Shown: positions 3,106 to 24,995, counted from the stretch's first letter. The stretch: 64,000 bases of DNA from Dimorphilus gyrociliatus (GCA_904063045.1 CAJFCJ010000009.1:2046968-2110967), one strand, 5' to 3'. Program-made: numbers and translations. Notes: generated by a model not told the origin, from the letters alone.

Positions 3106-6100
3106 CTATTTCTTATAAAAACCGATGATTAACTTGTTATGATGATTAAAATTTTTGATGAATTTTTGAGTTTGATTGATAATGTTTTGGTTTTTAGGAC
3201 AGGAAGAATTTTGATTGGGAAGGTAGCTTCTTTTTCCCTCTCCGTTCTTTAACCAACACCAAAGGATTAATTCAAGAATATAATACTTACGTGGCTGTTC
3301 TGTTGTAGTTAATGTTGTTGTTGGTTGTTTGGGGATGCAAAAGTATCCGTTGCCAATATATCCATCTTTGCACATGCAAGAATATCCTGGTTCTGAGTTT
3401 AGGCAGATAGCGTTATCGTTACATTTATGTAACGCTCTCTCACACTCGTTGATATCTATTTGAATAATTAAAAATTATTATGAATTACTAAAAATACAAA
3501 TAATCTCTATACTGACCAACGCACTTGCCATTTACCATCTCACTGCCTTCCGAGCATGTTAAAGGTTCGGTTGGTGCAAAAGGATCCCTTTCGCAAATAT
3601 ACTTAACATTTGGACTATTACAAGATAAAACTGCCCAATAGTATTTGCCATTAAATTCTCTTTCAACAGCACATTTGAGAGGGATTGTTGCTATCAAGGG
3701 ATTGTACCAATTTTCGTATTCATTTAACGATGAACCATCATGCCATTTCCAAGAGATAGCTACAGAACAAAAGAAAAATATATAAACTTTTTCAATATCT
3801 AAATTTCATCTCTTAAATCTACTTACGTCTTCTCTGTAATCCAATAAACGCATAGTCAATGTTGTTCTTCCTCAATAATCTTTGTACGGCATCTTCAGCA
3901 GCTTGACTCTTCATTTAGTGCTCATTTTAGAAATTTAAAATATATCATCTTTAAATTAGCTCACCTTGATTATCACCGGCTTCTTAGATTCAGATTCACA
4001 GTCATCTGCTATACTTAGACAATGATCTCTAGATTCTATTTCATCATCAGTGCAGAGACCTGTTGTTGTTGGTGATGTTTGTGTTGATGCTTCAGTAGAT
4101 GTTGATGTTGTAGATTTTATTACGCACTGTCCGTCTCCCGGTACGTACGGTGGAATGCAGATACATTCATATGAACCTAAGGTATGTCTGCTTAATTCAA
4201 TTTCAATTTAATTTGAAATATACCTGGTATATTTTTGCATATTGCTATTGGTGGACTCTGACATTGGTTATTTGTTATACATTCATTAATATCAACACAC
4301 TCTCCAGCAACCAACTCATATCCTGATCCACACTCTTTAGGTGTTGTCGAAATAGGTGTTGTTGCCAGTGGATCCCTTTCACAAATGTATTTAACATTAG
4401 GAGTATTACAGAAAAATGGTTTCCAATTATAAGTTTGCCCATCTTCATTAACAGCCTCAATTACGCATGCGAAGAATGGAAGATGGAAAGTTCCTGGTTT
4501 CCATGCATTATATGATCCTAAATATTCGTTATTCCACCATTTCCATTTATTGGCATCTTTCTCTAGTCCAATATATCCACTTTGTATGTTGTTCAAACGA
4601 AGGAAAGAGCTAACAGCCAATTGTGTTTGACGATTCTATCAAAAGATAAGTTGATATTCAATTAGAGATGAAGATATGGAAAATAGATAAAGAAAGGAAA
4701 TTAACCTCAATTATAACAGGTTTCTTAGCTTTAGTATAGCAGTCATCTTCAATACTAATACATTTATCATTAACTCCCATTTCGCTTTCTTCACATTGAA
4801 CTAGTTACATTTTTTATTTTAAAAAAGGCGTATTAATCAATAATCTTAATGTGATGTTATCTACCTGAACTAGTTGTTGTTGTTGGAGCTTCTGTTGTTG
4901 TTGTCATAGTTGTTGTAGGAGCTACACATTCGTCACCAATTTTCTCGTACGGTGGAAGGCACGCACACTCAAAAGTTCCTAAGAAATAGTTATTTAATTT
5001 TCACTTATTTTATATTTCAAGTAGTGATACCTGGTTTATTGGAGCATATAGATATCGGTGGACCTTGACAGGGATTGCTTAAGCACTCATCAATGTCGAT
5101 GCAATCTCCATCAACCAACTGATAACCAGGCGAACATGTCTTAGGAGTTGTGGGCGCTACTGTCTCTGTAGGATCTCTAGTACAGAAGAAGGGAAAATGA
5201 GATAGAGAGCACAAGAATGCTTGCCATTTCATGACACCAATCTCGCCATTTGCAATAGCACAGCTCATCTGGGGGGGTGCATTAGTTCCACTGGTATCGA
5301 AACTTGAATAATCAAGTGGACTATTATCCCTCCATATCCATTCTCCGTTGATCTTATTTATACCAATATAGCCAAGACGTTGATTAGTAGCATCCATTAA
5401 TCTTTGAAGTGCTTCCTCTATAGCTTTACTCTGATGGAAATGAATTATAGTTATTGTAAAATATAGAAATTTTCGCAGCAAACCTTAATCATTATTGGTT
5501 TCTTTCCTTTACTATAACAATCATTTTCGACGCTAATACATTGTCCATTAACTCCTATTTCTGTATCTTCACAATCGGCTGCAGTATGAAACAGTGTTAT
5601 AAAATATGTAAAGAAAAGTAACGATATCTGTTTAATCAACCTCCAGGAGTAGTTGTTGTTACAGTTGTTGTTGCTGTGGTAGTCGCTGGTAGAGTACATA
5701 CTTTACCATCCCCTTTGTAAGGATTAATACATAAGCAGTGATATCCACCTGAAGCACAATTAAAGGGATAAAATTATTTATGAATTATTCATTTTAGAGA
5801 AATAACAAAAATATAACCTGGTGTATCCAGGCATTTTCCTGCAGGTTCAGGAGCGCAATCGTTATCTCCATTTGTGCATTCATTAATATCTATTCAAGGC
5901 AATCGTAAAGACAAGTTAAACAATAATCACTAACTTCCAATAATTTTAGCTTACTTTGACAAACTCCATCAATGTTTTCGAATCCCGGTTGGCATGTTAT
6001 AGGTTCTGGAGTAGTAGTTGGTTCTGAACCTTCGTATTCGCATAAATATTCAAATGGAAGAGAACACGGGAAGCTCCTCCAATCTACATAAAGAACGCTG

Positions 6101-8121
6101 TAAAACAATTTTAACAAAACATTTTGATTGCGTTCTAAAGAAAAATTTTAATAAGGAACTTACGCATTGCTCATGATAACACAAGTTAGAATTGGATTAT
6201 TGAAGATAGGTTGATTTACACCAAAGTCATCAAAGAGATTTTCCCTGTTTTCTAAAGACCATTTAGAACCGTCGGCCCAGGTGAAAACAGACTTTCCGAT
6301 TCCATCAAGTGTAAGACCAATGAAAACATTTTGAATATTCCTCTCCTGAAGGAAGCTTTCAGCCAATATATTTGTGGCCTCATCGACTATTGAGAGGGGT
6401 TTCATACCATGCTCTGCACAATCTTTTCTAATGCACATACATATGTTTTCCTTGAATTGGCAATCGTCAGGGCATTCTAGGGAAAAATTTATGCTCTCTA
6501 AGTGAAAAAATTTCCAATATTAAAATAAAATTACGTATAGGTGCCTGTGTAGTTGTCGGTGGAAGAGTGGTTGTTGGTGGAATAAGAGTACACTGAGTTC
6601 CATCACCTTCATATCCGGCTTTACATTCGCATGTATAAGATCCTTGTGCGTTAATACAATTAGCATTTTCATCGCAATCGTGAGTACCACTGCATTCATC
6701 AATATCAATACATTCCTTCTTATCATTCATTTGGAAACCACTGTGACAAATACAGTCATAAGTTCCAATATCATTAACACAGGATGCATTTGGACCACAG
6801 TCAACAGTGTCACATTCATTAATGTCATCACACTTATCTTTTCCATCACCTTTGAACCCATCTTTGCATTTGCATTCATAAGTTCCAGGTTTATTTGTAC
6901 ACTCAGCTTCATTGTGGCATGTGTGTAAGTTTTCATTGCATTCATTGATATCTATGTACACAATGAGGAGGTCAGTTTTAAGATTAAAAAGCTTGTTTGA
7001 TAATACCTTCGCATTTTAAATCTGAATTTCTTCTATATCCATTGGGACACGGCGGAGCTAATACATAAAAGTAAAAATATCTGATTACACTCACACTATC
7101 AATATAACAAAAGATGTACTTACGTTCTTTACATTCAAAACCATCACCTTGAAAACCAGGTTTACAAACACAACTGTAACCTGGACTTTCATTAAAGCAA
7201 TCAGCATTGTTGCTGCATTTATCACTTCCATCATCACATTCATTAATATCGGTACATGATCCATCATCTTGCATTTCATATCCACTCTTGCAACTGCATT
7301 TTTGGATGCCTTCTGAATTTGAGCATATTTCATTGTCTCCTGTACAGCCTGGGAAATTTGAACATTCAGCTTTCTGTCCGGGTTTGCATTCGCATCTTTT
7401 TTTACAATCTTCTTGTAGCCACTTCTCTCCCAACTAAATATTTTAGTTTATGAATATGTTAATTACATTGTATGTATATATATATATGCCTAATTTAATT
7501 TAACCTTATAAATTGTACCATCAGCACCAGTACAATCTGTATTGCAGTTACTTGGCAATACGCATTCGTTGTCAATCATAACAAATCCAGTCTTACAAAC
7601 GCAAGAGTCAACATCTGGTTCATCGCAATTTGGATCACCCTAAATTGATATTTTTTTTTACGATTCATCATTAATATATGATTTAGCTTATTATTTTAGG
7701 CTTACATTTGGATGTTCGCATGTTGGTGGACAACCTGGAGCATTCTTTTTATATTCCATATTTGCGGGACAGTCAGTAGCTATAGAAATAGATGTGTTTA
7801 CATTTTAAAAAGTTCTTTAAAAAATGAATATTAAGTTACGGCAATTTGCTTCCTCTCTCCAATCTGGATTGTAATTATCAATGACATTATTACAAGCTTC
7901 GACAAACTTTTCAACAGCTGAACACAATGACACAGTTTGCTCATCATTGACAATGCATAAATCGTAGACGCATTCATCGTAGAAGGTTATCGCATCTATG
8001 TTAGGCTTGGCAATACATTGTGAAAATACACCAGTGCTATCTTTAATTATTGAACATAAACGTTTGGCTTCCGCATATTCTGCATCAGTACATTCGGGTC
8101 CAGGTTCAGTTGGTGGTTTAC

Positions 8122-8160
<39 letters not shown>

Positions 8161-11100
8161 TAATAATCACTTTAACAAGTTAATATAGCTATACTAAACT
8201 GTTTTGGACAATCGTCACAAGGTACCTCGTAGCTATTACCCAATTGAGGATATCTCTTTTTACCTCTTCTACCATGTGGCTTTCCTGGTACTGGATTTCC
8301 TGCTTTATCTCTATAATCGTTTGTCTTATCACCATTGAAATCACCGCAGATGCCGCACATTCTAATTAAGTGAAATAGAGTATGATATGGGTTTAAAACA
8401 AAAATGTACATTAGTACTTATTCTTATAGTTTGGTGGAATATGGATTTGTGTATTTGTTCTACCATCAAAAGTGACAACGAGGCCAAAAGTTGTTTTTAC
8501 TACTGCATAACTTCTCCTTCCTCTCCTCTTTTTGTATATTTTCAAACCCTTTGCCCTATCTCTAAATGATCTAATTATTCTCCTGCCATTAACGATTATT
8601 TTCAATCCTTGATCTAGTCTTATCTTGTAACCAAAAACTTCAATATCAACATATTTTGTCCAAGACACATCTCTATTCCTTCTACCAGGATATTTCCAGT
8701 TTCTGGCAAAAACTTTAAAGTTTGGCAAGTTTTCTTGCTCCTCTTTTGGACAAGGTCTAGAGTTTTAACAATTTTATTTGAAATACAGGTCAAGGTGAAT
8801 ACTCGTATGCACTTACTCGGCCAAAGTATATTTACAAGTACCCATAAAGTCCAAACGAGCTCCATCAAATGTTTTATAGTGAGGATCACCAGAAGCTTGA
8901 CACCACGCAGCCTTTTCGCATTTCTTAACTCCCTTGTCGTTTATTAAAGTGAAACCAGGATAGCACACGCAGAAATATCGGCCAGGTTTATTAATGCATT
9001 TCATATTTGCACCGCAAGGTTTGCTTAGACATTCATTAATATCTGTAAAAGATGTTTAATAATTAATACTCTTTGTTTATGCTCATTTACTTTTATCTTC
9101 TTAAATAAAGTTTAACCTTCGCAAGGACCATTTGGTAAGACTTTTCTTTTATATCCAGGGTCGCAAGGTATGACTAATTTTAAAAAATTTTAGTGCAGAA
9201 TTAGTATATTTAGTAACAATAGCATCAAATTTTATGTAAAAACCTTCGGTACAAATGATACCATCTCCAGTGTAACCAGCATTACAAGTACATTCATAAG
9301 TACCAACTTTATCTCTGCATGTTGCCTTTTCATGACATTTATTCAAATCATCGTTAGCGCATTCATCAATATCTAAATAAAATATTTTTATATACTAAAT
9401 AGTTAATTGGTCTTTACTTATGTATCAACTTACTTGTGCATTTTCCAGCGATCATTTCATAGCCTTTTGGACAGTGGCATCCTCTAACTCCATCTTTGAT
9501 TTTGCAAATAGCCAATGATGGGCAAGCTGGTAGTGAAGTCTTGCTAAATTTTCCATTGGCTTGACATACATATTTGTATTTACAATCATTTGTAATATAT
9601 CCATCACCGACCTAAAAATATATGAAAATGCTAGTTTTAGAATTACCCTGAAAAGGTATTCCTTACGGAAAAGTATCTATCATCAGGAGCCGTACAACCG
9701 CATTGATCCTCTTTAACACATTTATCACCGCTGAGAACATAGCCTGTATTACATTGACATCCTTCCACAGGTTCAGCATCGCAATTATCAGGATTATCGT
9801 CTGGGTTTGCGCAAGTAAGAGGACAGCTTGATGAGGTTGGTGAATATGAGCTATTTGGTCCGCATGGTAATGCTTTAAAACGAATAAATTCAAATTTTTA
9901 GGAAATCTTTCAAGCGGAAGAATAAAGTATAATTACGGCAGAAATTGGCTCTTCTCCATAGAACATTTTTTCCTGCTTGTTGTTCGCAGAGAACCGCTAA
10001 TGTTTCTAATGCTTTGCAGAGCATATCATCGGTTTTAGCCAAGCATAAATCGTACGTGCACTCTTCGTAAAGCTTTTTACAAGTAATATTAATAAGGCTT
10101 TAATTCAATTTTCTACAAGAAATACTTACATCATTAACTAGGGATGGATCTTGACTATTCAATATATTGATACAATCTTTGAAAGGTCCTTGAACATTCT
10201 TAATAATACCACATTTGTTGTTTCCTGAAATTTCTGCCATTTCATCTTCATCACAGTTTGGCTGAGGATCATCTGGTTTTTTACAAGCAGCTTCTCCATA
10301 CTGATCTGGTACTTCCCAACTATTTCCAATCTTTGAATATCTTCTCCTTGTAATTTTACGTCCTCTTCTATCAAAAGTAACAATGTCTGGTACTACGATA
10401 TTTCCATTGGAATCAGAGTAATCATCATTTCTGTTTCCATTGTAATTACCACATAAACCGCACATACCACTGAAATTAGTCATTGCCTTAATAAGTTAAA
10501 TGAATTTCTCTCAAAGTTATAACTTACATATTTTTATAAATATCTGGTATTTTAACATAAACTGACGATCTACCATCGAAACTCACTTGAAGACCGAAGG
10601 TTGTTGTAAGTTTAACAAATCGACCACTGAACTTTATTAAAAGACCAGGTGCTCCTGCCAATGCTTTTATTGGTAAATTATAGGCCTTTGGATTTTCCTG
10701 TTTCATATTTTGTTTGTGTGTTTTAATTTATTAAAGTTAGATGCAAAATAATAAAAACTTACAGCAACAAAGCCGGTATCTATCTTCTTTAAAGTAGAAA
10801 TGATAACCTTTCGTTTTTGATCCAATTTAATTTCATAACCGTAAACTTGAACGACAACGTATTTTGTGTATGAAACGGTTGTCTTTCTTCCTCTATGCTC
10901 ATTCTTTACTTCAACGTTAAACATTGGAACGCTAACTTTTTCGGATTTGGGGCAAGGTTTAACCAATGTATAGCGGCAAATACCCATAAAATCGATTTTA
11001 GCTCCATCAAAAGTCTTGTAATGGGGATCTCCCGAACCCTTACACCATGCAGATCTTGAACATGATAATTTACCATTAATTAATCTTTTTTGATAACCTC

Positions 11101-14100
11101 TTCTACATCTACATGTAAAACCACCAATTCTATTGATACAGTAAGAATTTGGAGGGCAGTCATCAGTTTTTAATTGACATTCGTTGACGTCTTTGCAAAC
11201 TTTAGCTCCGTTTTCCATTCTGAATCCATCATTACATTCACATTTATAAGAGCCTATAATATTGACACATTTATGTGGGCAGACACTTGGAGTTTGCTTG
11301 CATTCATCTACGTCTTCGCATTTATTGTCCTTGTTGACGAATCCTTTACGACATATGCAATCATATCCCCCAACCTTATTTTTACATTCAGCCTCTGGAG
11401 GACAAACCGCAGCTATTTGATCATCATCGCTCGATACAGTTTTACATTCATTGATATCCTCGCAATAAGTCTGACCATCTCCTGCATAACCAGATTTGCA
11501 TTTACATTTTCTTTCCCCATCTTCAATACCACATTCTGCCAAAGTATGACAAACAACTTGATCTTCTTTGATCTCACCTCCTTGAGAACAGGTGTACTTT
11601 GTGCCACATTGACTGTCACCCCAAGTTTCTCCAAGCTGTTTATACATACCATCTGCGGTCATGCAACCACATTCCGTTTCTGGCACACAGTCTGTTCCTG
11701 ATTGAACGAAACCAGGATTACAAACACAACCATCGCTAGGTGCAACTGTACAAGTTTTAGGAGCTTCAGGATCTTGACATGTTGATGGACAGGCTGGTGC
11801 GTTAGCTTCATAATGCATGTTTGGTCCACAAGGTAGAGCTATTTACATGAAAAAAAGTATAGAAGGAACATTAAACTTTAAGAACATATTTAAAGAGTTT
11901 TAAAAGTAAACTTACGGCAGAATGTTGCTGTTCTCCAACTGACTTCGATACCATTAGCTTTGCAAGAGTCAGCATAACTTTGAAGAGATTGACACAAATC
12001 AGTTATTTTTCCCTGTGCAGCGCAAACATCCATCTTACAACTTTCGAAATGATCAGTAATAGGCGTACTGGCATGGCATGCTTTAAAAGCTTCCATATTT
12101 TTTAGGCGACCACAAAAGTTATTTCCTTCGTATTCAGCCATTTCGGCAGTTGTACAGGAAACGTCATCATCATCCTCAGGTTTCAAGCATCTATAATTTG
12201 AATTTATATTCGAAAATTTTTAGTTTAAAGCATTCAAATTAAACTTATTAACTCACTGTTCATTGGCTGAATTGGTTGTATCGTCTGGTACTTCCCAACT
12301 GTTACCAATTTCAAAATATGGTTTCTTAACTGACAATCCCTTAGGATAATAATCATCTCTTGCCTTTTGGAAAAAATGGACAAATTAAAATCATTTACAT
12401 ATGTATTAACTCTATATTGTTAATTATTAATTATCTTTAGCTTACGTTTCCATTCCAGTTTCCACAAAGACCGCACATTTTGTTCTGATATTGAGCTGGT
12501 AGTTTAACAACAGCCATATGGTTTCTCTCAAAGCTAACTTGAAGACCGAAATCGGTTGATACAACCAAACGATAACCGCATTGGAGTACAACCTTCAATT
12601 TGCCGTCTAAGTATTCAACAGTGGGATTAACTCTAATTCCATTGACGAGAACAACACGATTTTTCATTAGGCGAATAGTGTAGCCATACACTTTTACATC
12701 AACAATTTTAGTATGAGCAACTTTTTTACTGCTTCTGTGCTCGTTTTTAACTTCGACATCGAATTTTGGCAAAGTTCCTACTTTGTCAGTGCAAGGTTTG
12801 GCAAGTGTATATTTACATGTTCCTTGGAAATGGATCATAGCTTTGTCAAAAGTTCTATAATGGGGATCTCCCGAAGCTCTACATTCTCCGGCAACTGTAA
12901 GTTTGTTAATAATTTAATAAAAGTTATCCGTTGTTTATTCACTTATCCCTACTTCCGCATGAAAGAACGCCTCCAATGATCTTTGGTGTTCGTCCTCCTT
13001 GACAAACACATCTGGAACCACCTCTATCGTCAATACATCTTGCTCCACTACCACATTTAAGCTTACCAGTTTTACCTAATCAAAATTATCATTTAAGTCT
13101 ATTATGATGTCATTAATAAATATTTAATACAAACAATCAGTGCTACGGATATAGTCAACTCTAGCTTCGCAAACATAGCGAACACGTGTACCACAATCTA
13201 TACTCTCCCACTCTCCAGCATCGTTCCCGACAGATAGGAAAGCAGCGCAAGCTTTTGATAAAACGGTCTCTGCCTCCTCAGACGACCTAAGCCAGTTTTT
13301 GTAAGACTGAAAAATGGATTTTTTTACAAAGTTAAAGCTATTCTCTGATTATTAGATCAATTTAGTTCTTACTCCGTATTTAGTTCCGTCAAACCATCTC
13401 CATTGATTTCCTGATGACTGAGAAGAAGTTCCCCAGCCCCAGCCCCATCCCCAACCATGCCATCCTCCTGTGTTTCCAGACGAGGAACCAGTTTTCTTAA
13501 GACCAATCCATGCTTTTGAACTAACTGTTGCTTCTTGTCTAACAAAGAAAAAATTACTCGAATGAATATACTGTATTTACTATGAGATGAAATGTACTTA
13601 CAATATTTTTTGGACAAAATTTGATTCATCACTATTGCTAATACTTGCCAATGTTCCACCAGCAGCTTTACAAAGTTCATTAGCATCGCTTTGAGATTTA
13701 GTATCAGTGGAAACTCTGTAACATTTACCACCGTATGTCTTCCATCCAGTTGGGCAATCGACTGAAATTTTTCATTAGGTAAGATTGAATGAAAGTAAAT
13801 ATATTTAATATATCAACATACTATCAATTCGATAATCGTTACGTCCTCTGTATTCGCAAACAAAACCTCTCTTGTCAGAACATCGGCCGATATTCCATTT
13901 ATGATTAGAACTTGTTGCGTAACCGCAGTCCAACGTGTTACTTCTACTTGGCTATTAAGATAAGGTGTATGATTGAACACGTACATATTTCATAATAGAA
14001 TGAATTTATTATATACTTGATTAGTATTCCAGTATGTTCTTCCTGAAACAGTTCTCTTTTGACATCCAAGTATCCATTCAAATCTACCTTCCTTATATCT

Positions 14101-17036
14101 ATCGTGTAGACCCATCCAATAAGTTCCACTGGAAAGTTTCAACAACTTAGTAAGTTGATTAAACATATTTGATGTACTTGGAACAACCAAGTATCCTCGT
14201 CCATTTTTCCAGCATGCCGATTTTGCACTGTACCAATCTAAGGAGGTGCTAAAATATTTAACACAGCGTTTTGTACCAGGAATTTTAATTGATCCAGTTG
14301 GACAGTGTTTATACTCATCCGATTGGCCTTGGACAGCTATTTAACGAACAATTATGATATACAAAGTAAAATTATACAATATGACTTACATTTAAAGCAC
14401 TTAATTGATCCAGTTGCAGAATAACAACATCCCAAATTAATACAATGTGCCTGAGAAATTCCACTATAACCACAAAGAACTCTACTAGCTACAGCAGCAT
14501 CACAATTCCTTGAGGATTGTTTCTTACAAACGAATCTGTAAGATTTTGAACAATACATATCTTTCCATTTTTTGTCGCCAATTCTAACGCAAGGACCGCT
14601 GCCGTCTGGTTCAGAAGATTTCCAAGCTTTATATTGAGCTTCTTTACCATTCATCCAGAAATATTTACCACTCTTTTTTTGTAAACCAATCCAATAGTCT
14701 TCGCTTGTTTTCAAGTGTTTCACAACGAAATTCATTTCAGCTTCACTGTAAATATCAGCCAAGTTGGCATCGTATGCTTGGCAAGTACTACTAGCTCTGG
14801 TTTGAGTCTTTTTCTGATTTCCAAAATAATAGCAATGGCCTTCATATGGTATCCAATATTTATCGCATCTTGTTGGTTCTGGTTCGTTCGTTGGTGGAGT
14901 TGTTACATCGCCTAATCTCTTTTTATTTTCGCCATAAATCATATCGTTGTGAGAGTTGAATTGTACTCCTGGTGACCTTTTCGAAATTTTTGACAAATAA
15001 CATTTAAGTCTGTTGTGATCGTAATCGAAGCTTTTACAATCTCTGTTTTCTTCACATTTCGCAAGACAATCGAAATAGGTGTAGAGATTTGAGTAATCCT
15101 TAAAATTATTGTCTTTAAGATATCTGTTGTTAAAAATGTGATAATCCGGATTGTCTTTATCCATTCTTGCCTTATTCACGCCGTGCACATAGCTTGAGCT
15201 TGATGACATTTTATGAGGTAGAGTTTTCTTACTATTCCTTGAGAGTGAACATCTCCTGTTTGACTTTCTGTAATCAAATGATTTGCATGAGGACCATTTA
15301 TCACATTTATCCATACAGGCTTCTTGCGATGAAACATAGTAAGAGTAGTCATCTTTATCGCTCAAGTAGCCAGGAGATAAATCATAATTCGAAGATGGAC
15401 TTGTTGGTTGACCTTGAGGTTTTGTACTTCCAGACCAGAATTGGCAGATATATCTTTTTTTCTCAGAGCACGAGGAATCTTGAAGGACCTTAGATCCACC
15501 ATGGTACCAGGCGCAATTTTCTCTTGTATTCCCGTTTGGTTCACCGCTTTTCCATTTTAAATTTTTAGCGTCATAATTGATTTGTTTTTTATCCCATGTA
15601 AAGGACCATTTTCCTTCAGATTGTTCATCATTAGCGTTAATCCAATATACTGATGTAAAGCTAGATAATAAAAAGATTAATATATAAAAGAAGAGGTAAC
15701 ATATCTATGTAAAAAATGAAATTATTTCATCATTTACTTACTATCCTGGATAGTTTCTGAAAGTTTCATAAGCAGCATCATCCAAAATTGCCAATGTTCC
15801 TTTCTTGTGGTCACACTCCTTAATAGCATCGCTATATTTTTTTGTACTTGTATACATAAGATAGCATCTATCATTTCTGGCATCGGGAATTGCTCCTTTT
15901 GGACAATGGTCATCTAAATTAAAATTCGTTTAGTATAAATATGAAAAAACTACTAGAAAACTTACACTTCCTAAGTTTGTTAATATAATGAGACACTCCA
16001 CTATAGGTCTTCATCAAACTTGGATCAGTATAGGCTGATTTTGTCAGCAGTTTGCATCTAATTTAAATAAATAAGTGAAAAAATCACTAAAATGGTAAAG
16101 AAGATAATTTATTACAAACGTTCTAGTTGAAGGTTGATAGTTAAAGGATTTACAAGTAGAAGAAATAAGGCATTTCATAGCACAATCAGACAAACTAGTC
16201 TTCTGTGTTTGAGTGACAACGTACAAAGCCTTGTTTGTTATTACATCAAAAGATTTTTGAAAATCTAATATGAATTGAATTTGAATATATTAAAATAAGG
16301 TTATTGATGATAATCCATTGACGTTACCGAATCCATAATCGTAAGAATTTAGTCTATATTCGCACAGGAAGTATTTTTTACTTGAACAGCTTTGAGGGGA
16401 AAGTTTATGGTTGAAATTTCCCTCAGCAACGGCACATTGACCTAGGTTATAATTTCCTGGCTGATAGATGAAATGGGATTATTGATGGGAAAAATCTCAA
16501 AGAAATGAGTTCAAATAGCACCTTAGTCTTCCATAGATTTGAATCAGATGTCTTGTATTCCAAATCTCCTGCTGTCCATCTCCAATCACCTTTCAATGAT
16601 AAATCTCTATAACCTACCCAATAGTAGTACATACCTTTACTATTTAAATGGAGAAAGATTATCCGTTTAGATAGGATGAACAATAAATAATTAATCATAT
16701 TTAAAACTTAACGATTTATATTGAGAGTTCAAATATTTGATTGTGGATGAACTGTGGACATTGGCTAAGAATCCATTGTATTTCTTACACTCTTTTACCG
16801 CATCGTCGTAGGATTTTGAAGATTTATAAAATTTATAGCATCTCTTTGCACTCGAATCATAAAAAGAGTTGCTAGGACATTTTGAAAGTTTTTCTGTATG
16901 AGATTAATATTTACAATATACGAATATCTAATAAATCATATTTGTTTGGAGTATATTTACTGAAAGAGTAAGTCTTTAATTCAACAGCAACAAAGAGTTG
17001 CAGGAGAGCAAACGCCAGAAAAATTCTCGAACGCAT
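3106..17036 (-). CDS. Giant secreted mosaic protein: signal peptide, 5 C-type lectin domains with 3 PAN/apple domains and a trefoil domain, 3x (VWD-C8-TIL) with Ca-binding EGF clusters, then 4x (divergent CTLD-Thr-rich linker-EGF); FCGBP/zonadhesin-like
   Basis: ATG at 17036 gives the signal peptide MRSRIFLAFALLQLFVAVELK. CTLD motifs (WIGL/WMGL, WxW, EPN, EPD); PAN motifs (C..KC.....CKSF.Y); trefoil CDAAVASRVLCGYSGISQAHCINLGCCY; three GDPHY-TFD VWD starts; CGLCGN motifs; many D(I/V)(N/D)EC EGF starts. Dozens of short in-phase introns link the ORF-track fragments. The last exon (below ~3290) is uncertain, so the end coordinate is approximate. Confidence 0.85.
8126..8158. repeat. (TA)n microsatellite in an intron of the mosaic gene
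   Basis: Run of ~16 TA units; it explains the IYIYIY artefacts in the ORF track. Confidence 0.9.
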
Positions 17037-18629
17037 AGTTAAGCGTTCTTTCTATCTGAATAAGGGTAATAATAATTTTTAACTAATTAATTAATTAATT
17101 GGTTAATTGATTAATTAATTAGCAAGTTAAGTAGACTATTTACTTACTTGAAGAAAGATGAGAATCAAACTATGAAAGACAATGCAGTAATGAATGTCTT
17201 TTTTGTATCAGCAAAATGATTGATATATATCGGCGCGTAAACACAGCTGGATTGACTGTAAATGCGAGCCTTTTATACTTCGCGATAATAAAGTTCTACT
17301 CAAAGATATTTGACGTTTATTAGTTAATATATTTTTAGTACCTAGCATCTGCTAATAAAATCTGATTGACTTGTTCACCATATGCTTAAGGACTTATGAA
17401 GCACGTGTCACAAAGATGAATGGGCAGATGACAAATCAAAATAAAGTGTATACATCCTTTTTATCCATTTATCAATAGTCATCTATAAGAATGTGACGTT
17501 GTCATCAATCTATTTATACGCTAATATTTTTTTATCATTCCGAAACTGGAATAGTTTCTGTTTTTATTAATGAGTTTAATTCTTAGAAGAGCGCTATTAT
17601 AAATTACAAAGAAGTCGTAAAAAAGCTTTATTAATATGAATATATTAAAGATATAGGCAATAAAAAAAATTAAAATTAAAAGGATTAACTTCAATTCGAT
17701 AGATTCTTTTAATAAACTTCTTTTTTTTCTTTAGTTTAGAGGTCAAGACACTCTTGGTTAATTGACCAACATTCTATAATTTTCTTTTTATCCTTAATCT
17801 TTTCCTTTCTTTTCAAATCTTTTCTTTTTCCATTCCTACTTTTCTATTTTTTTTCTTTGTCTTTGTGATAAGAGAAAGAGACAGAGAGAGAGAGAGAGAT
17901 TAATGAATAATTAAACAATTAATTAGTTTGATAAAAAAAAAACTAGCCAATTATCTTTGTTTTTTAATAATTTATCTAATTGAAAAGTGGAATTTGTAAA
18001 TTATTATTGAATAATAATTCAAAGTAGTTGGATTTAACTTTTAACAGCTTAAATTAAGTGCTTTTTTTTGTCTGATATTTTGTACGATCTAACTTATATT
18101 TGACATTCATAAATTTTCATCATCATAAATATTGCCGTTGTAAATCACTTTAATGACATTCTAGTGACCTATGGTCAGTTAAATGACATCTACGTTTGAC
18201 TCTTAGACTAATTTTTGAAATATCTCTTATTATGTATTAAAAAAGTATATTGAACCAGATTTTTGCCTTTTGATGTTGAATAGTTTGTACCATATGTTTA
18301 CCTCTCCAAAGTCAATCAATCACGCTTGCGCTTTCTCTACGATTTCAATTTTAAAATAAGGGTTCAAAAATCTTAAATATTATTGTATTACGATTGATCA
18401 CCTTCCACCGAATCTGTATTGAAGTTTAAAAAAGGGGTACTACTAAATTTCGTCCATGTGGGAGATAGATAAAAAGAAAGAGACAAAAAAAAGAGACTGC
18501 CAGAAAATATTAAACGAGTAATAACTCTTTCCTGTTATTACTTTCGGTTTAAATTGAAATAATAACCAAGAGACAAGGACACGTGACATATGTCACTTTT
18601 TTCTATTAATAATAAATATAATGTAAATA

Positions 18630-20096: not shown

Positions 20097-21268
<1,172 letters not shown>

Positions 21269-21826
21269 ACAATAAAAATGTAGCCAGAAACAAAGAAATA
21301 AATTATTTATAAAGGCCATTTTAGCCTGATTTTTTTTTATTATATACATTACATAGTATAAATTTATATATAAATACATTTGTAATTATTACTTTATATC
21401 TTTCTCATCGTTTTCTCTTCTTTAAATAGCAACAAAATGGCTTATAGAAAAGAAGAGTGGAAAACAGAAAGATAAGAAAAGAACTTCTTTCATTTTTTAA
21501 GACTATTTATTCATCTATAAATAGTATCTTTTCTATTGAATTTCCTCATATATATGTTAATTAGTCATTCAAAATTTTTGTAGAAACTCTATTATGCGAT
21601 TCTCTTAAATTAGTATAATAAGAAAAAGGAAAAGAAACCTAAAGTATATACTACACATACATAATCTAAAAGAACATTACTCTACGTTACGTTAAGCGAA
21701 AATTATACGTAACGTTCGAACTTTGAGAAAGAATAGATTATTTAGCAAGTTGCTTTTTGCTAAACACTTTCTTTAACATAAGAGATTATTACGTACTGTT
21801 TTGTTTGTTTGTTTTTTATTATAACT

Positions 21827-22759
21827 ATGGCTAGACTCGGAAATATTAAAGGCCCTTGGACATCGGAGGAGGATAGTCAAGTTTCATTTCTTGTTCAACA
21901 ATATGGAACTAAAAGTTGGTCGTTGGTAGCTCAATACATTTCTGGAAGAACTGGGAAACAATGTAGAGAACGTTGGCATAATCACCTCGATCCTACAATT
22001 AAAAAAACGGCATGGACTTTTGAGGAAGACAAACGATTGTGCTTACTACATTCAAGGCTTGGTAATAAATGGGCAGAGATAGCTAAGAAGTTGCCTGGAA
22101 GGACCGACAACGCGATCAAGAACCACTGGAATTCAACAATGAAAAAAAAATTCGAAGCTCAAGAGGCCATAATAAGAAGTTTGACGCAGGTTCCGGAATC
22201 CATAAATGAGGACGAAATTGATTGGACTGGCCTACGCCCAGCTGTTGTATTACAAACCAAGCAAACCGTTATGGACGAGAAAAATCCAAAGAAAAATAAT
22301 GACGAAGCTGCGTGCTCCGTTCGCAGGGCTGATTGTAACAATTATCGTTTAAAACTTAAAGTTCCGGAAATAGTTAGACGTAATTGTTCGACAATACTGC
22401 TTCGAATGTCTTCTGATCTGTTCCCATCTATTGATTGGAACCTATCAACACCATTTTATCCAAAGCCCTCCGAAGAAGTCGATACCCAATCGAAAAGCGA
22501 CACCGAAACCCCCTCAGTAGAGAACCTAAGAAATTATATGCAGCAAAAGAGGGCCCGTTTAAGAAGGAAGCGAGTTTTATCATTATCAATTAACGACAAT
22601 TCGGAGAAGAAGCCAAAAAATGACCTAATACCAATTAGTACTGATGAATTAGATGCGCCTCTAGAATGGCCAGAAATTCCCTTACTCGACAACGATCTTT
22701 TATCAGCGTTTGATGAGACAGCCTTAGATACACTTGGCTTGTTAGGGGATAGTAGTTAA
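21827..22759 (+). CDS. Intronless c-Myb-type transcription factor with only the R2 and R3 repeats
   Basis: First ATG at 21827. R2 is KGPWTSEED...[17 protein letters not shown]; R3 is [10 protein letters not shown]...[27 protein letters not shown]. Confidence 0.9.
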
Positions 22760-23384
22760 ACAAAGACGCTAAAAATAGCTTGAAAAAATTTTAATCTCAT
22801 TTTTCATAGTGTGATCTAGCTAAAATACCCTTAACAACGTAAGATCGCTACGAATGCTAAGTATTGGAAACGATAAATCAATAATTCCCTTTGCTAATTT
22901 TAACAAATTGAGTCTTACCATATATGAATAAAAATATAACTTTTGTGTAAATTTATCGAAAAAAATTCTTTTTTTTTATTCTATCTATTCTGAAAATCAG
23001 GCTCATAATCTGACCTAACCTTATCACATTAAGTTTAAATATTTTTATTCGTTTATATCTCAACATTCTCAAAGATAGTTTTTAATCTAAGAGCTATCTA
23101 TCTTTTTGATAAACATCAGTAGATCATCGATCATATTAAACGGCCGTTTTTATATATATATTTTTTAAGTAAACCTCTAAAAGCTTTTGGAATGGCACGA
23201 GACATTCAACACAGGAGAAAATATGCATGAAACAACATTCAACCTATTATAATGGTTTATTATTAGTACGCTCCAAAAAAAATAGTGAATATAATCTAAA
23301 ATATCAGATTATTAATTTACTTTTATTTTACTATTAAATATATTCGGCCTTTTCCAAATTTTATCTCCTACCATCCTCGGATTC

Positions 23385-24242
23385 CTAGTCGCCTTCGGCA
23401 CAAGTCCCTCTTACACTACCATGTTTAATCTGATCATCTAGTTCTTTTTTAACTTTTTCCTCTAATTGACGGATGTCATCCATGGTTAAACCGTGCCATT
23501 TGTCCATCCAACAGAACACCTGACGATGGAAATTAGTAAAGATCCTCTCCTCCTGATTTTGGACCATCTTCTCAACACGTGTTTGTAAGCCAAACCACTT
23601 GAAATGTACTCTAACCAATTTGTATGCGCACATGACAGGCATGCCATGATTTTTCATAAGCCTCCACCATTCTGGTCCAACAAGAGGACCTCTCCCAGTT
23701 TTATCAGAGTGAAACTTAAGTGGATCTTCATGAGCTTTATAGTCACTCCTGTTAGGTAGTTGTTGCTGGTGTTTGGATATATCTATGTAGACAATTTGTC
23801 TCTTTGCTAGTTCTTCTTTCGTAAGACCATGAACATTATCTTGCATTCCTTGGTCGTTGTCAATATGCATAGAAGTGATGCTCAATTCAAAATTTTCCTT
23901 CATATAGCCCGGATTCGTCAGGACTGTCTTACAATAAGGATAAGCATTCCATGCCTTCTCAGTAACTTCTAATGAACCCTTAGGTGCAACCATTCTGAGA
24001 AATCTCGGTACTTTTTTCGAAATGTGATAGATTTTTTCAGTGTACTGCCCCTCCGTGAAATTTCCCGGCATTCCCGGAGGTTGAATACCTTTTTCCGATT
24101 TAAATGGTTCATTTATTAAAACTTCAATACCATCACCACCGCCAGTTTCATTTTTACTAGTTTCAGCGACAGAGAAAAGTTGACCAACTTGGTATTCCTC
24201 TGTTGTCATCGGCAGTAACACACGGAACTCATAGATAAGCAT
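23385..24242 (-). CDS. Class I phosphatidylinositol transfer protein (PITP alpha/beta type), intronless
   Basis: EFRVLLPMTTEEYQVGQLFSVAE, ETGGG.GIEVL, GQYT.KIYH, EKAWNAYPYCKT and FHRQVFCWMDKW. Inositol-binding Thr/Lys/Glu/Asn equivalents are present. Confidence 0.95.
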   Translation of the reverse strand: MLIYEFRVLLPMTTEEYQVGQLFSVAETSKNETGGGDGIEVLINEPFKSEKGIQPPGMPGNFTEGQYTEKIYHISKKVPRFLRMVAPKGSLEVTEKAWNAYPYCKTVLTNPGYMKENFELSITSMHIDNDQGMQDNVHGLTKEELAKRQIVYIDISKHQQQLPNRSDYKAHEDPLKFHSDKTGRGPLVGPEWWRLMKNHGMPVMCAYKLVRVHFKWFGLQTRVEKMVQNQEERIFTNFHRQVFCWMDKWHGLTMDDIRQLEEKVKKELDDQIKHGSVRGTCAEGD

Positions 24243-24995
24243 TTTTGATGATCAATAAATTCCACTATATTTACGAAGTAAATGAAGAGCAAGATTTCCT
24301 GCGCTCGTCACCGTTTCTATTAAGTTGCTCGACCTTCAAGATATAGTCTGTTCTAAGATTTACCTAATTTTTCACCAAAATTCGGCGAATATCAGAGGTG
24401 GCTTGTGGAGGCAGCCATGTTGAAAAGAGTAAAAGAACTATATAGAGTAATGAGACATAGAAATCGATAAACATCGAAATCGAAATCACGCAGGATATCG
24501 CATCGAATTCATGTTTGAATATATACCAGTCGATTCGATTTTCTATAGGGCGGAAGGTAGATGAACAAATTCTATACACGTTCATAGTTTGGTTACTTAT
24601 TCCAATTACTAAATATTCTTATAGTTTTCTCTTAGAACCCGTGTCCGAAGTTATTTTAATCTAAAGCTCTCGTTGTTTCGATTGTGGCACTATATGAGTC
24701 ACTGAATAACCTATTAGTTCATAACAAGTTGTTTGTATTTTTCATAAACTTTTATAAAAATAAATTTTAATACATTTGCCGAAAATTTTCGATACTTATA
24801 CCACGGAATTAAAAAAGATTCAGTCTTAGATTTCGACCTACGGGTACCTGCATCAGTTCATACCTTTTGTAAAAATACGATTTAAATAAATGAATTAGTC
24901 ATTTTGATAACGAGCTGACGTTCTCTTCGTTTCTCTGTTCAACAGCATTTTTTTTTAATAAAACGAAAGACTAATAAGTTTTATCAATTATTTTT

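What the first reader, a model, noticed from the sequence alone, without database searches (positions are those of the whole stretch)
3106..17036. Giant all-in-one mucus/lectin mosaic protein with an architecture I cannot match to a known protein
Seen: one reading frame, joined by in-phase short introns, encodes SP-CTLD-PAN-CTLD-PAN-PAN-CTLD-trefoil-CTLD-CTLD-EGF-3x[VWD-C8-TIL-EGFs]-4x[CTLD-Thr linker-EGF]. I estimate roughly 3,300-3,800 aa, and no transmembrane segment was found. Known: VWD-C8-TIL assemblies polymerise gel mucins, FCGBP and zonadhesin; CTLD, PAN and trefoil modules bind glycans. Inference: a polymerising scaffold carrying lectin arms at both ends, possibly for mucus, cocoon or adhesive secretion, or microbe trapping.
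Basis: partly seen in the sequence, partly recalled or inferred. Interest (0 to 1): 0.75.

Follow-up and report, generated by a model that had tools for sequence, protein, structure and literature searches.

The report
Giant secreted multi-lectin VWD scaffold gene
This is one real 47-exon gene of a tiny marine worm that encodes a 410-kDa secreted protein with sugar-binding modules strung on a mucus/glue-type core; it is a new layout of a protein kind already known from sea-star and flatworm glues, and its function is untested.

Summary
On the minus strand, 17036 to 3106, a chain of 47 exons joined by 46 GT-AG introns of 47-82 nt gives one open frame of about 3,672 aa. It has a signal peptide, no membrane segment and 7.3 % Cys. 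The four tail lectin domains are too divergent for Pfam, but their profile hits only C-type lectin structures.

The three VWD units are FCGBP-type and each starts with a GDPH self-cleavage motif. There is no long mucin domain, cystine knot, MAM, ZP or membrane anchor.

The "unmatchable architecture" claim is overstated. CTLD-EGF-VWD-C8-TIL-EGF cores define the cohesive proteins of flatworm (ap1) and sea-star (Sfp1) temporary glues.

The same genome holds a collinear paralog on another contig: 37 % identity over 2,100 aa and 18 of 29 introns shared. It has a SUEL-lectin tail, and a PAN domain where this gene has its trefoil. This scan probably noted that paralog before, on other DNA (s1-080751).

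A related organism keeps head and core exons at 69-73 % identity with all 52 cysteines conserved.

Best reading: a secreted, multivalent cross-linker of mucus or adhesive. It is a new variant of a known kind. Expression, tissue and ligands are untested.

The parts
17056..17277 (-). Putative promoter and 5' UTR: TATAAAAG at 17277-17270, a non-coding first exon ending at 17148, and a 92-nt GT-AG intron at 17147-17056
   Evidence: Read directly from the sequence. This is inference only; there is no transcript data.
16961..17036 (-). Exon 1: start codon and signal peptide (basic n-region followed by a 14-residue hydrophobic core)
   Evidence: It is the highest hydropathy window in the protein and the only Met followed by a hydrophobic stretch.
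16328..16893 (-). CTLD1 (exons 2-4)
   Evidence: Pfam Lectin_C, E 1.9e-5, on the first piece. A WIGL-like motif lies in exon 3.
15966..16264 (-). PAN1 (exons 5-6)
   Evidence: Pfam PAN_1, E 9.6e-7.
15390..15913 (-). CTLD2 (exon 7 plus the start of exon 8), the only CTLD with an EPN motif
   Evidence: Pfam Lectin_C: two stretches in the big exon, E 6e-28. EPN at residue 346.
14925..15347 (-). PAN2 and PAN3 (inside exon 8)
   Evidence: Pfam PAN_4 E 1.1e-6 and PAN_1 E 1.7e-16.
14520..14813 (-). CTLD3 (inside exon 8)
   Evidence: Pfam Lectin_C, full-length match to profile positions 2-107.
14391..14504 (-). Trefoil (P-type) domain at the end of exon 8
   Evidence: Pfam Trefoil, E 2.1e-8, 34 bits against a cut-off of 21. 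It is conserved in the relative's fragment P0001.
13822..14336 (-). CTLD4 (exons 9-10)
   Evidence: Pfam Lectin_C, E 1.9e-8 and 1.7e-4 on the two pieces.
13135..13761 (-). CTLD5 (exons 11-13), with a Gly-Trp repeat insertion in exon 12
   Evidence: Pfam Lectin_C, E 1e-4 and 3e-4 on the flanking pieces. Exon 12 translation is.
12953..13075 (-). EGF-like module (exon 14) joining the head to the core
   Evidence: Weak Pfam EGF hit. Both flanking introns are shared in position and phase with the C7 paralog.
11501..12894 (-). D assembly 1: VWD1 (GDPH at residue 1095), C8, TIL, TILa
   Evidence: Pfam VWD 1.1e-37, C8 5.4e-18, TIL 2.1e-9, TILa 1.6e-5. Best PDB matches are human FCGBP D assemblies.
11057..11500 (-). 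EGF run 1 (about four EGF/cbEGF modules)
   Evidence: Pfam EGF_CA 9e-27, three stretches; also cEGF and EGF_3.
9474..11044 (-). D assembly 2: VWD2 (GDPH at residue 1633), C8, TIL, TILa
   Evidence: Pfam VWD, C8 and TIL. The exon 18/19 junction is confirmed by the relative's uninterrupted ORF P0157.
8903..9473 (-). EGF run 2, including the 57-nt mini-exon 25
   Evidence: Pfam EGF_3 and EGF_CA; exon model.
7296..8902 (-). D assembly 3: VWD3 (GDPH at residue 2179), C8, TIL, TILa
   Evidence: Pfam VWD, C8 1.7e-12, TIL and TILa.
6535..7295 (-). EGF run 3 (about six EGF/cbEGF modules, with the 51-nt mini-exon 33), ending in a Pro/Thr linker
   Evidence: Pfam EGF_CA 4.8e-28 and EGF_3 1.3e-26. Pro/Thr window at residues 2778-2790.
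5641..6476 (-). Tail unit 1 (exons 35-38): divergent CTLD, Thr linker, EGF, cbEGF, Thr linker
   Evidence: Alignment A1. Its profile hits only CTLD structures. cbEGF signature at residue 2946.
4865..5578 (-). Tail unit 2 (exons 39-41)
   Evidence: Pfam Lectin_C E 9e-4, below threshold. A1 profile. hhalign against head CTLD3 gives E 0.0028.
4061..4800 (-). Tail unit 3 (exons 42-44, 5' part)
   Evidence: 38 % identical to unit 2; A1 profile.
3290..4060 (-). Tail unit 4 (exon 44 3' part to exon 47): divergent CTLD, EGF, cbEGF, Thr linker
   Evidence: Pfam EGF_3 4.9e-10 and EGF_CA on the last exon; alignment A1.
3106..3289 (-). Uncertain C-terminal tail and stop codon. Either read-through to the TAG at 3108-3106, or splicing from the GTAAGT donor at 3290 to a short alternative ending. 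No domain in either case.
   Evidence: Pfam finds nothing in the downstream pieces.

Best explanation
A single 47-exon gene, in what earlier notes of this scan identify as the miniature annelid Dimorphilus gyrociliatus, encodes a soluble secreted protein. It is about 3,670 residues, about 410 kDa and cysteine-rich.

Shown: the protein has three parts.
- A basic head (pI 9.2) with five C-type lectin domains, three PAN/apple domains and one trefoil domain.
- A core of three FCGBP-type D assemblies (VWD-C8-TIL-TILa), each opening with Cys-x3-GDPH, separated by runs of calcium-binding EGF modules.
- An acidic tail (pI 4.8) of four units, each a divergent CTLD, a short Thr linker, an EGF and a cbEGF.

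Inferred: it works as a multivalent cross-linker (a 'cohesive' component) of a glycoprotein secretion such as mucus, temporary adhesive or cocoon.
- The D assemblies form a disulfide-locked scaffold. They are probably cut at the three Asp-Pro bonds yet held together by disulfides, as in FCGBP. That would give pieces of about 122, 59, 60 and 166 kDa on reduction.
- The cbEGF runs act as calcium-stiffened spacers.
- The lectin, PAN and trefoil modules at the two ends tie glycans of co-secreted mucins, of surfaces or of microbes together.

It is not a gel-forming mucin.
For: One gene:
- 46 consecutive phase-compatible GT-AG introns of 47-82 nt. The published median intron in D. gyrociliatus is 66 bp, and that genome has no spliced leaders.
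- There is only one signal-peptide-like Met.
- Many domains are split by introns.
- The head-to-core junction introns are shared with the paralog.
- The exon 18/19 junction is reproduced by an uninterrupted ORF in a relative.

Domains.

FCGBP-type VWD with conserved Cys-x3-GDPHY-TFD.

GDPH cleavage with disulfide retention in FCGBP: PMC10880436 and PMC8267560.

Secreted, with no transmembrane segment.

Selection: 69-73 % identity and 52 of 52 cysteines conserved in a relative.

Functional class: CTLD-EGF-VWD-C8-TIL-EGF proteins are the cohesive proteins of flatworm glue, with an RNAi phenotype and presence in footprints (PMC6410801, PMC9229212). Sfp1 is a 426-kDa protein cleaved into four subunits (PMC7037938). 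TFF3 (trefoil) pairs with FCGBP in vertebrate mucus.
Against:
- No sequence comparison with Sfp1 or ap1 was possible, so the link to adhesive proteins rests on architecture only.
- Only CTLD2 has an EPN motif. No CTLD has WND or QPD, so sugar binding by most modules is unproven.
- The K/R-rich flanks of Mlig-ap1 are absent.
- The tail exon found no relative.
- The same domain set would also suit an immune agglutinin or an egg-envelope protein.
Confidence: 0.55

Rival explanations
1. Humoral immune or clotting lectin. The protein would be a secreted agglutinin that traps microbes or seals wounds, like insect hemolectin/hemocytin. The lectin arms would bind microbial glycans and the D assemblies would drive aggregation.
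For: Many lectin-type modules are present, including an EPN-type CTLD, together with PAN and trefoil domains and VWD-C8-TIL units. FCGBP itself is proposed to help clear trapped pathogens.
Against: The discoidin (F5/8 C) domains and cystine knot typical of hemolectin/hemocytin are absent. Most CTLDs lack the calcium/sugar-binding motifs. No expression data are available.
Confidence: 0.15
2. Structural or binding protein of the egg cocoon, egg envelope or gamete surface, analogous to zonadhesin or alpha-tectorin.
For: VWD-C8-TIL repeats with GDPH are shared with zonadhesin/tectorin-type proteins (established knowledge of those families). The worm lays eggs in a secreted cocoon (my own knowledge, not checked here).
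Against: No MAM, NIDO or ZP domain, no transmembrane segment and no GPI-type hydrophobic C-terminus were found.
Confidence: 0.15
3. The span holds two or more separate genes (for example a lectin head gene, a VWD gene and a CTLD-EGF tail gene) that only look continuous.
For: The tail exon found no relative, so conservation of the core-to-tail link is not shown. Intron 34 stays open if retained. There is no transcript evidence.
Against: - Every gap is a 47-82-nt GT-AG intron in compatible phase.
- No internal Met has a signal peptide.
- Exons 14, 15 and 35 start mid-module without a start codon.
- The two introns around the head-core boundary are conserved in the paralog, and one 2,217-column alignment runs across that boundary.
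- The paralog also runs on from its core into a lectin tail.
- No operons or spliced leaders occur in this species.
Confidence: 0.05
4. A gel-forming mucin that polymerises end to end, like MUC2 or VWF.
For: It has three D assemblies, CGLCG motifs and Thr-rich linkers.
Against: The longest Pro/Thr/Ser stretch is about 12-15 residues. There is no cystine-knot domain. The D assemblies are internal and separated by EGF runs. They score about 100 bits each against FCGBP, but only 103-127 bits in total over three D assemblies against mucins and VWF.
Confidence: 0.03

Closest known systems
Flatworm adhesion protein 1 (Mlig-ap1, Mile-ap1, Tmed-ap1), the cohesive protein of the duo-gland temporary adhesive
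   Same: Both are secreted, giant and Cys-rich. The order signal peptide, CTLD, EGF, VWD, C8, TIL, long cbEGF array (Tmed-ap1) matches the window gene from CTLD5 through D assembly 1 and EGF run 1.
   Different: The window gene has three D assemblies instead of one. It adds four more head CTLDs, three PAN domains, a trefoil and a four-unit CTLD-EGF tail. It has no VWC domain and none of the K/R-rich low-complexity flanks of Mlig-ap1. Sequence relatedness was not tested.
[quoted passage not shown]
   Same: Sizes are similar (426 kDa against about 410 kDa) and both have about 5-7 % Cys. Both combine VWD, C8, CTLD and EGF domains. Sfp1 is translated as one chain and self-cleaved into four disulfide-linked subunits. 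The window protein has three GDPH sites that would also give four pieces.
   Different: Sfp1 carries discoidin and galactose-binding lectin domains and has no PAN or trefoil. In this worm it is the C7 paralog, not this gene, that has the SUEL/galactose-binding lectins. I could not verify whether Sfp1 is cut at GDPH, because the paper is not held.
FCGBP (IgG Fc-binding protein) of vertebrate mucus
   Same: It is the best sequence match of the VWD units (about 100 bits per D assembly). The Cys-x3-GDPHY-TFD motif and CGLCGN are conserved. It is a secreted mucus component. It pairs by disulfide with the trefoil protein TFF3, whereas here a trefoil domain sits in the same chain.
   Different: FCGBP has 13 contiguous D assemblies, an N-terminal FCGBP-specific domain and no EGF, CTLD or PAN modules.
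Paralog in the same genome (G000 contig 7, about 23,500 to 1, minus strand; probably scan finding s1-080751)
   Same: It aligns collinearly with window residues 500-2640 at 37 % identity. 18 of 29 introns are shared. It also has three GDPH sites and the same CTLD/PAN head, EGF and three D-assembly plan.
   Different: It is larger (at least 5,614 aa) and strongly basic (pI 9.7). It has SUEL-lectin plus PAN repeats at the front and at least 13 near-identical SUEL-lectin units as its tail. It has a PAN domain where the window gene has its trefoil.
Gel-forming mucins/VWF, zonadhesin and alpha-tectorin
   Same: All contain VWD-C8-TIL assemblies; some carry GDPH.
   Different: The window gene lacks a mucin domain, CysD, cystine knot, MAM, NIDO, ZP and a membrane anchor.

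Membership tests
FCGBP orthologs | Tandem VWD-C8-TIL D assemblies with a GDPH motif and the upstream Cys that keeps the fragments disulfide-linked | tested here: met
   Pfam. Alignment to PDB 8rde shows Cys-x3-GDPHY-TFD conserved. There are three GDPH motifs.
FCGBP orthologs | N-terminal FCGBP-specific domain followed by about 12-13 contiguous D assemblies with no other module types | tested here: not met
   The head consists of CTLD, PAN and trefoil modules. There are only three D assemblies, separated by EGF runs.
Gel-forming mucins / VWF | Long Pro/Thr/Ser-rich mucin domain | tested here: not met
   The longest PTS-rich window is about 12-15 residues.
Gel-forming mucins / VWF | C-terminal cystine-knot (CTCK) dimerisation domain | tested here: not met
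   No Pfam hit other than EGF in the last exons or the downstream pieces.
Temporary-adhesive cohesive proteins (Sfp1 / ap1 class; a functional class, not a proven homologous family) | Giant secreted Cys-rich chain combining CTLD, EGF, VWD-C8-TIL and a cbEGF array | tested here: met
.
Temporary-adhesive cohesive proteins (Sfp1 / ap1 class) | Expression in adhesive gland cells, presence in footprints, and loss of adhesion on knock-down | not testable with these tools
Temporary-adhesive cohesive proteins (Sfp1 / ap1 class) | Sequence relatedness to Sfp1 or ap1 beyond shared domain types | not tested
   The length filter of the word search (0.55-1.75 times the query) excludes these long proteins for exon-sized queries. 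The joined model was not submitted.
Zonadhesin / alpha-tectorin | MAM or NIDO domains, a ZP domain, and a membrane anchor | tested here: not met
   Pfam found none of them. There is no hydrophobic segment apart from the signal peptide.
C-type lectin-like domain (the four tail modules) | CTLD fold signature (WIGL-like motif and conserved Cys/Trp framework) recognised by profile | tested here: met
   The A1 profile hits only CTLD chains in the PDB (8.5e-10, 1.2e-5, 3e-4 and so on). Pfam alone is sub-threshold.
C-type lectin-like domain (sugar-binding subtype) | EPN or QPD plus WND calcium/carbohydrate motifs | tested here: not met
   There is one EPN (CTLD2) and no QPD or WND anywhere. Sugar binding by the other eight CTLDs is therefore unsupported.

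The most novel reading that the evidence does not exclude
The worm has a small family of single-chain 'all-in-one' secretion cross-linkers. Trefoil, PAN and lectin modules, which in vertebrate mucus are separate partner proteins such as TFF3 and FCGBP, are here fused to FCGBP-type self-cleaving D assemblies. The paralogs keep the core but swap their lectin cassettes: a CTLD-EGF tail plus trefoil here, a SUEL tail plus PAN on contig 7. On this reading each paralog is addressed to a different glycan matrix, such as glue, mucus trail or cocoon. That would give the first molecular handle on temporary adhesion or mucus architecture in annelids.
Probability: 0.15. Interest if true: 0.6.

Novelty: new variant of a known kind. 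Interest (0 to 1): 0.35.

Why it matters
- If expression in gland cells is confirmed, this gene and its paralog would be the first candidate cohesive or mucus cross-linking proteins of an annelid. They lie in a compact, tractable genome.
- They would extend the recurring CTLD/EGF/VWD-C8-TIL toolkit of underwater adhesives to a new phylum.
- The cis-fusion of a trefoil domain with FCGBP-type D assemblies gives indirect, Rosetta-stone-style support to the TFF-FCGBP partnership seen in vertebrate mucus.
- The paralog pair is a natural experiment in swapping lectin cassettes on a constant scaffold.
- In itself, a lineage-specific mosaic of common extracellular modules is not surprising for an invertebrate.

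Tried and rejected
- Big HMMER search with the head exon. The results were swamped by multi-CTLD 'mannose receptor-like' proteins at about 30 % identity. None of the 150 best has VWD, C8 or TIL. This is uninformative on the architecture, and the window's own annotated protein was not listed.
- ESM Atlas with exon 18. It returned only generic FCGBP, VWD and kielin clusters, all scoring below 0.9.
- Word search with the head exon found a single relative fragment. The search with the tail exon was blank, which says little because of the length and word limits.
The 17,977-nt contig that probably carries both P0001 and P0157 could not be fetched, and no transcript contigs could be examined.
- The Sfp1 paper (PNAS 2014) is not held, so the nature of Sfp1's cleavage sites was not verified.
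- hhalign of the tail profile against head CTLD3 gave only E 0.0028 and 11 % probability. I relied on the PDB profile search instead.
- The joined (spliced) protein was never sent to any database or folding tool. All such searches were exon by exon, by reference. The joined models were used only inside local scripts, for composition, hydropathy and local BLAST against the paralog locus. A full-length architecture search was therefore left out.
- I rejected the gel-forming mucin, zonadhesin/tectorin and hemolectin memberships because defining domains are missing.

Full report
**What is there**

The finding lies on the minus strand. Stop-free stretches rich in cysteine follow each other from 17,036 down to 3,106. 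The local G+C is 34-36 % against 28-30 % in the flanks. I scanned every stop-free piece against Pfam by reference. In 5'-to-3' order the hits are:
- Lectin_C
- PAN_1
- one 450-codon open stretch (holding exon 8, 423 codons in frame) with two Lectin_C matches, two PAN domains and a Trefoil domain (E 2e-8)
- two further Lectin_C domains, each split by introns
- a weak EGF
- three repeats of VWD (best E 1e-37), C8, TIL and TILa, each followed by several EGF_CA/EGF_3 modules
- a region with only weak Lectin_C and EGF signals
- a clear final EGF_CA

**Gene model**

I wrote a splice-aware dynamic-programming script. Its codon table and splice-site matrices were trained on the confident pieces and then iterated. 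It yields 47 exons and 46 introns.
- Every intron is GT-AG and 47-82 nt long.
- The frame is continuous over 3,672 codons, from the ATG at 17,036 to the TAG at 3,108-3,106.
- 41 of the 46 introns would give an in-frame stop if retained. Phase 1 dominates (24 of 46), as expected for shuffled extracellular modules.
- Upstream there is a TATAAAAG box and a plausible non-coding first exon with a 92-nt intron. This part is inference.

The 3' end is uncertain by about 60 residues. A perfect GTAAGT donor at 3,290, right after the last Thr linker, could splice to a short alternative ending. Alternative ends score almost the same. No further domain lies downstream.

The joined protein was used only inside local scripts. 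All database searches were made exon by exon, by reference. The joined-model search was left out.

**Organism**

Earlier notes of this scan name the genome as Dimorphilus gyrociliatus. I checked this only partly. The assembly has 77.9 Mb in 349 contigs. The genome paper reports 73.8 Mb, a median intron of 66 bp and no spliced leaders (PMC7854359). These values fit the introns seen here.

**One gene or several**

The indirect evidence for one gene is strong.
1. Every gap is a short intron in compatible phase.
2. The only Met followed by a hydrophobic stretch is the first one. Exons 14, 15 and 35 begin in the middle of modules.
3. A paralog on contig 7 of the same genome aligns with window residues 500-2,640 in one 2,217-column alignment at 37 % identity. 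The alignment runs straight across the head-to-VWD boundary. 18 of 29 introns are shared in position and phase, including both introns flanking exon 14.
4. A fragment from a related organism (P0157, Logan assembly, 73 % identity) reads without interruption from exon 18 into exon 19, exactly at my predicted junction.

The core-to-tail link near 6,500 rests on frame continuity, on the lack of any start signal, and on the paralog also running from its core into a lectin tail. The tail exon found no relative.

**Properties of the protein**

- About 410 kDa, 7.3 % Cys (268 cysteines) and an overall pI of 6.8.
- The charge is polarised: the head has pI 9.2 and the tail pI 4.8.
- There is no hydrophobic segment apart from the signal peptide.
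- Each of the three VWD domains starts with Cys-x3-GDPHY-x-TFD. If the chain is cut there, it gives pieces of about 122, 59, 60 and 166 kDa.
- Pro/Thr/Ser linkers are only about 12 residues long.
- Only CTLD2 has an EPN motif, and no WND or QPD motif occurs. Classical calcium-dependent sugar binding is therefore supported for at most one of the nine CTLDs.

**Tail modules**

Pfam alone does not recognise them: the best match is E 9e-4, below the threshold. A profile built from the four modules (A1) hits only C-type lectin structures in the PDB. The matches include an IgY-receptor/mannose-receptor-family protein at 8.5e-10, Endo180 at 1.2e-5, DEC-205, CD23 and Reg proteins.

**Which VWD type**

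The VWD1 exon matches human FCGBP D assemblies at about 100 bits each. The alignment is end to end, and the GDPH motif, its upstream Cys and CGLCGN are all conserved. Mucins and VWF score far lower. GDPH motifs in FCGBP cleave autocatalytically at Asp-Pro, while a disulfide keeps the fragments together (PMC8267560, PMC10880436).

**Comparison with known proteins**

The gene fails the membership tests for several families:
- Gel-forming mucins/VWF: no mucin domain and no cystine knot.
- Zonadhesin/tectorin: no MAM, NIDO, ZP or anchor.
- FCGBP proper: no FCGBP N-domain, only three D assemblies, and EGF spacers between them.

The combination is nevertheless not unmatched.
- The polyclad flatworm protein Tmed-ap1 is described as signal peptide, C-type lectin, cbEGF, VWD, C8, TIL, VWC and 19 EGF domains.
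- Mlig-ap1 has a C-type lectin, a VWD-C8-TIL unit and 17 EGF modules in its core.
- These are the cohesive proteins of the temporary adhesive, supported by footprint and RNAi evidence (PMC9229212, PMC6410801).
- Sea-star Sfp1 (426 kDa, 5 % Cys; discoidin, VWD, CTL, C8 and EGF domains) is made as one chain and self-cleaved into four subunits (PMC7037938).
- The authors state that this domain combination recurs in adhesion-related proteins of echinoderms, molluscs and flatworms.

I could not align the window gene with Sfp1 or ap1. The resemblance is therefore of architecture and presumed mode of action, not proven homology.

**The family in this genome**

The contig 7 paralog has at least 5,614 aa, 88 exons in my model, pI 9.7 and three GDPH motifs. 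It keeps the head/EGF/three-D-assembly plan but differs in three ways:
- It carries SUEL-lectin plus PAN repeats in front.
- It has at least 13 near-identical 468-bp SUEL-lectin units as its tail, running to the contig end.
- It has a PAN domain at the position of the window gene's trefoil.

A note of this scan (s1-080751) very probably describes that locus. Its follow-up reached the same Sfp1/ap1 comparison.

The window gene itself stands alone among unrelated neighbours: a CLAMP-domain gene, a Myb gene, a PITP gene and HMG-CoA reductase.

**Conservation**

Two fragments from one Logan-assembled relative match the head exon and the core exon.
- P0001 matches the PAN-CTLD-trefoil part of the head exon at 69 % identity, with 16 of 16 cysteines conserved.
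- P0157 matches the TIL-EGF-VWD core exon at 73 % identity, with 36 of 36 cysteines conserved.
- Both are reported from three contigs with the same longest contig of 17,977 nt. Head and core are therefore probably linked there too.

Beyond this relative I found no protein that shares the head exon's layout. The length limits of the searches make that a weak negative.

**Verdict**

This is a real, selected, single gene for a secreted multi-lectin scaffold. It is best read as a cross-linker of mucus or glue rather than a polymerising mucin. It is a new variant of the known Sfp1/ap1/FCGBP-like kind, not a new kind. Function, tissue and ligands remain untested. Interest is moderate (0.35).

Noticed in passing
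L009:1-6322 (G000 contig 7, minus strand): At least 13 near-identical 468-bp tandem units, each encoding a SUEL/rhamnose-binding lectin domain (Pfam E 1e-20). They run to the very start of the contig, so the array and the paralog's 3' end are probably truncated or collapsed by the assembly.
   Followed up: partly
window 14391-14504 versus L011 (contig 7, about 13,116-13,802): Where the window gene has its trefoil domain, the paralog has a PAN domain at the same place in the alignment. This is a one-module swap inside an otherwise collinear head.
   Followed up: partly
window 13373-13538 (exon 12): CTLD5 carries an odd Gly-Trp repeat insertion (about 12 residues of alternating G and W, flanked by Ser/Gly) just after its WIGL motif. 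The paralog has a gap in this region.
   Followed up: no
window 10698-10762 (intron 18) versus P0157: The relative's ORF P0157 reads straight from exon 18 into exon 19. This phase-0 intron is therefore absent in the relative (an intron gain or loss between close species). The same read-through confirms the predicted splice junction.
   Followed up: partly
window 9117-9173 and 7007-7057: Two mini-exons of 57 and 51 nt encode matching half-EGF-like peptides (Pro-Cys-x-Pro/Asn-Gly-Tyr-Lys/Arg-Arg ... Cys-Glu). They sit at equivalent places in repeat units 2 and 3.
   Followed up: no
whole protein model (window 3106-17036): The charge is strongly polarised: the lectin/PAN/trefoil head has pI 9.2 and the CTLD-EGF tail pI 4.8. 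This could allow head-to-tail electrostatic self-association. The paralog is basic throughout (pI 9.7).
   Followed up: no
window 20451-26819: The upstream neighbours are unrelated genes: a CLAMP (flagellar C1a-32) domain gene and a Myb gene on the plus strand, and a phosphatidylinositol transfer protein and HMG-CoA reductase on the minus strand. The lectin-VWD gene is not part of a tandem cluster.
   Followed up: partly
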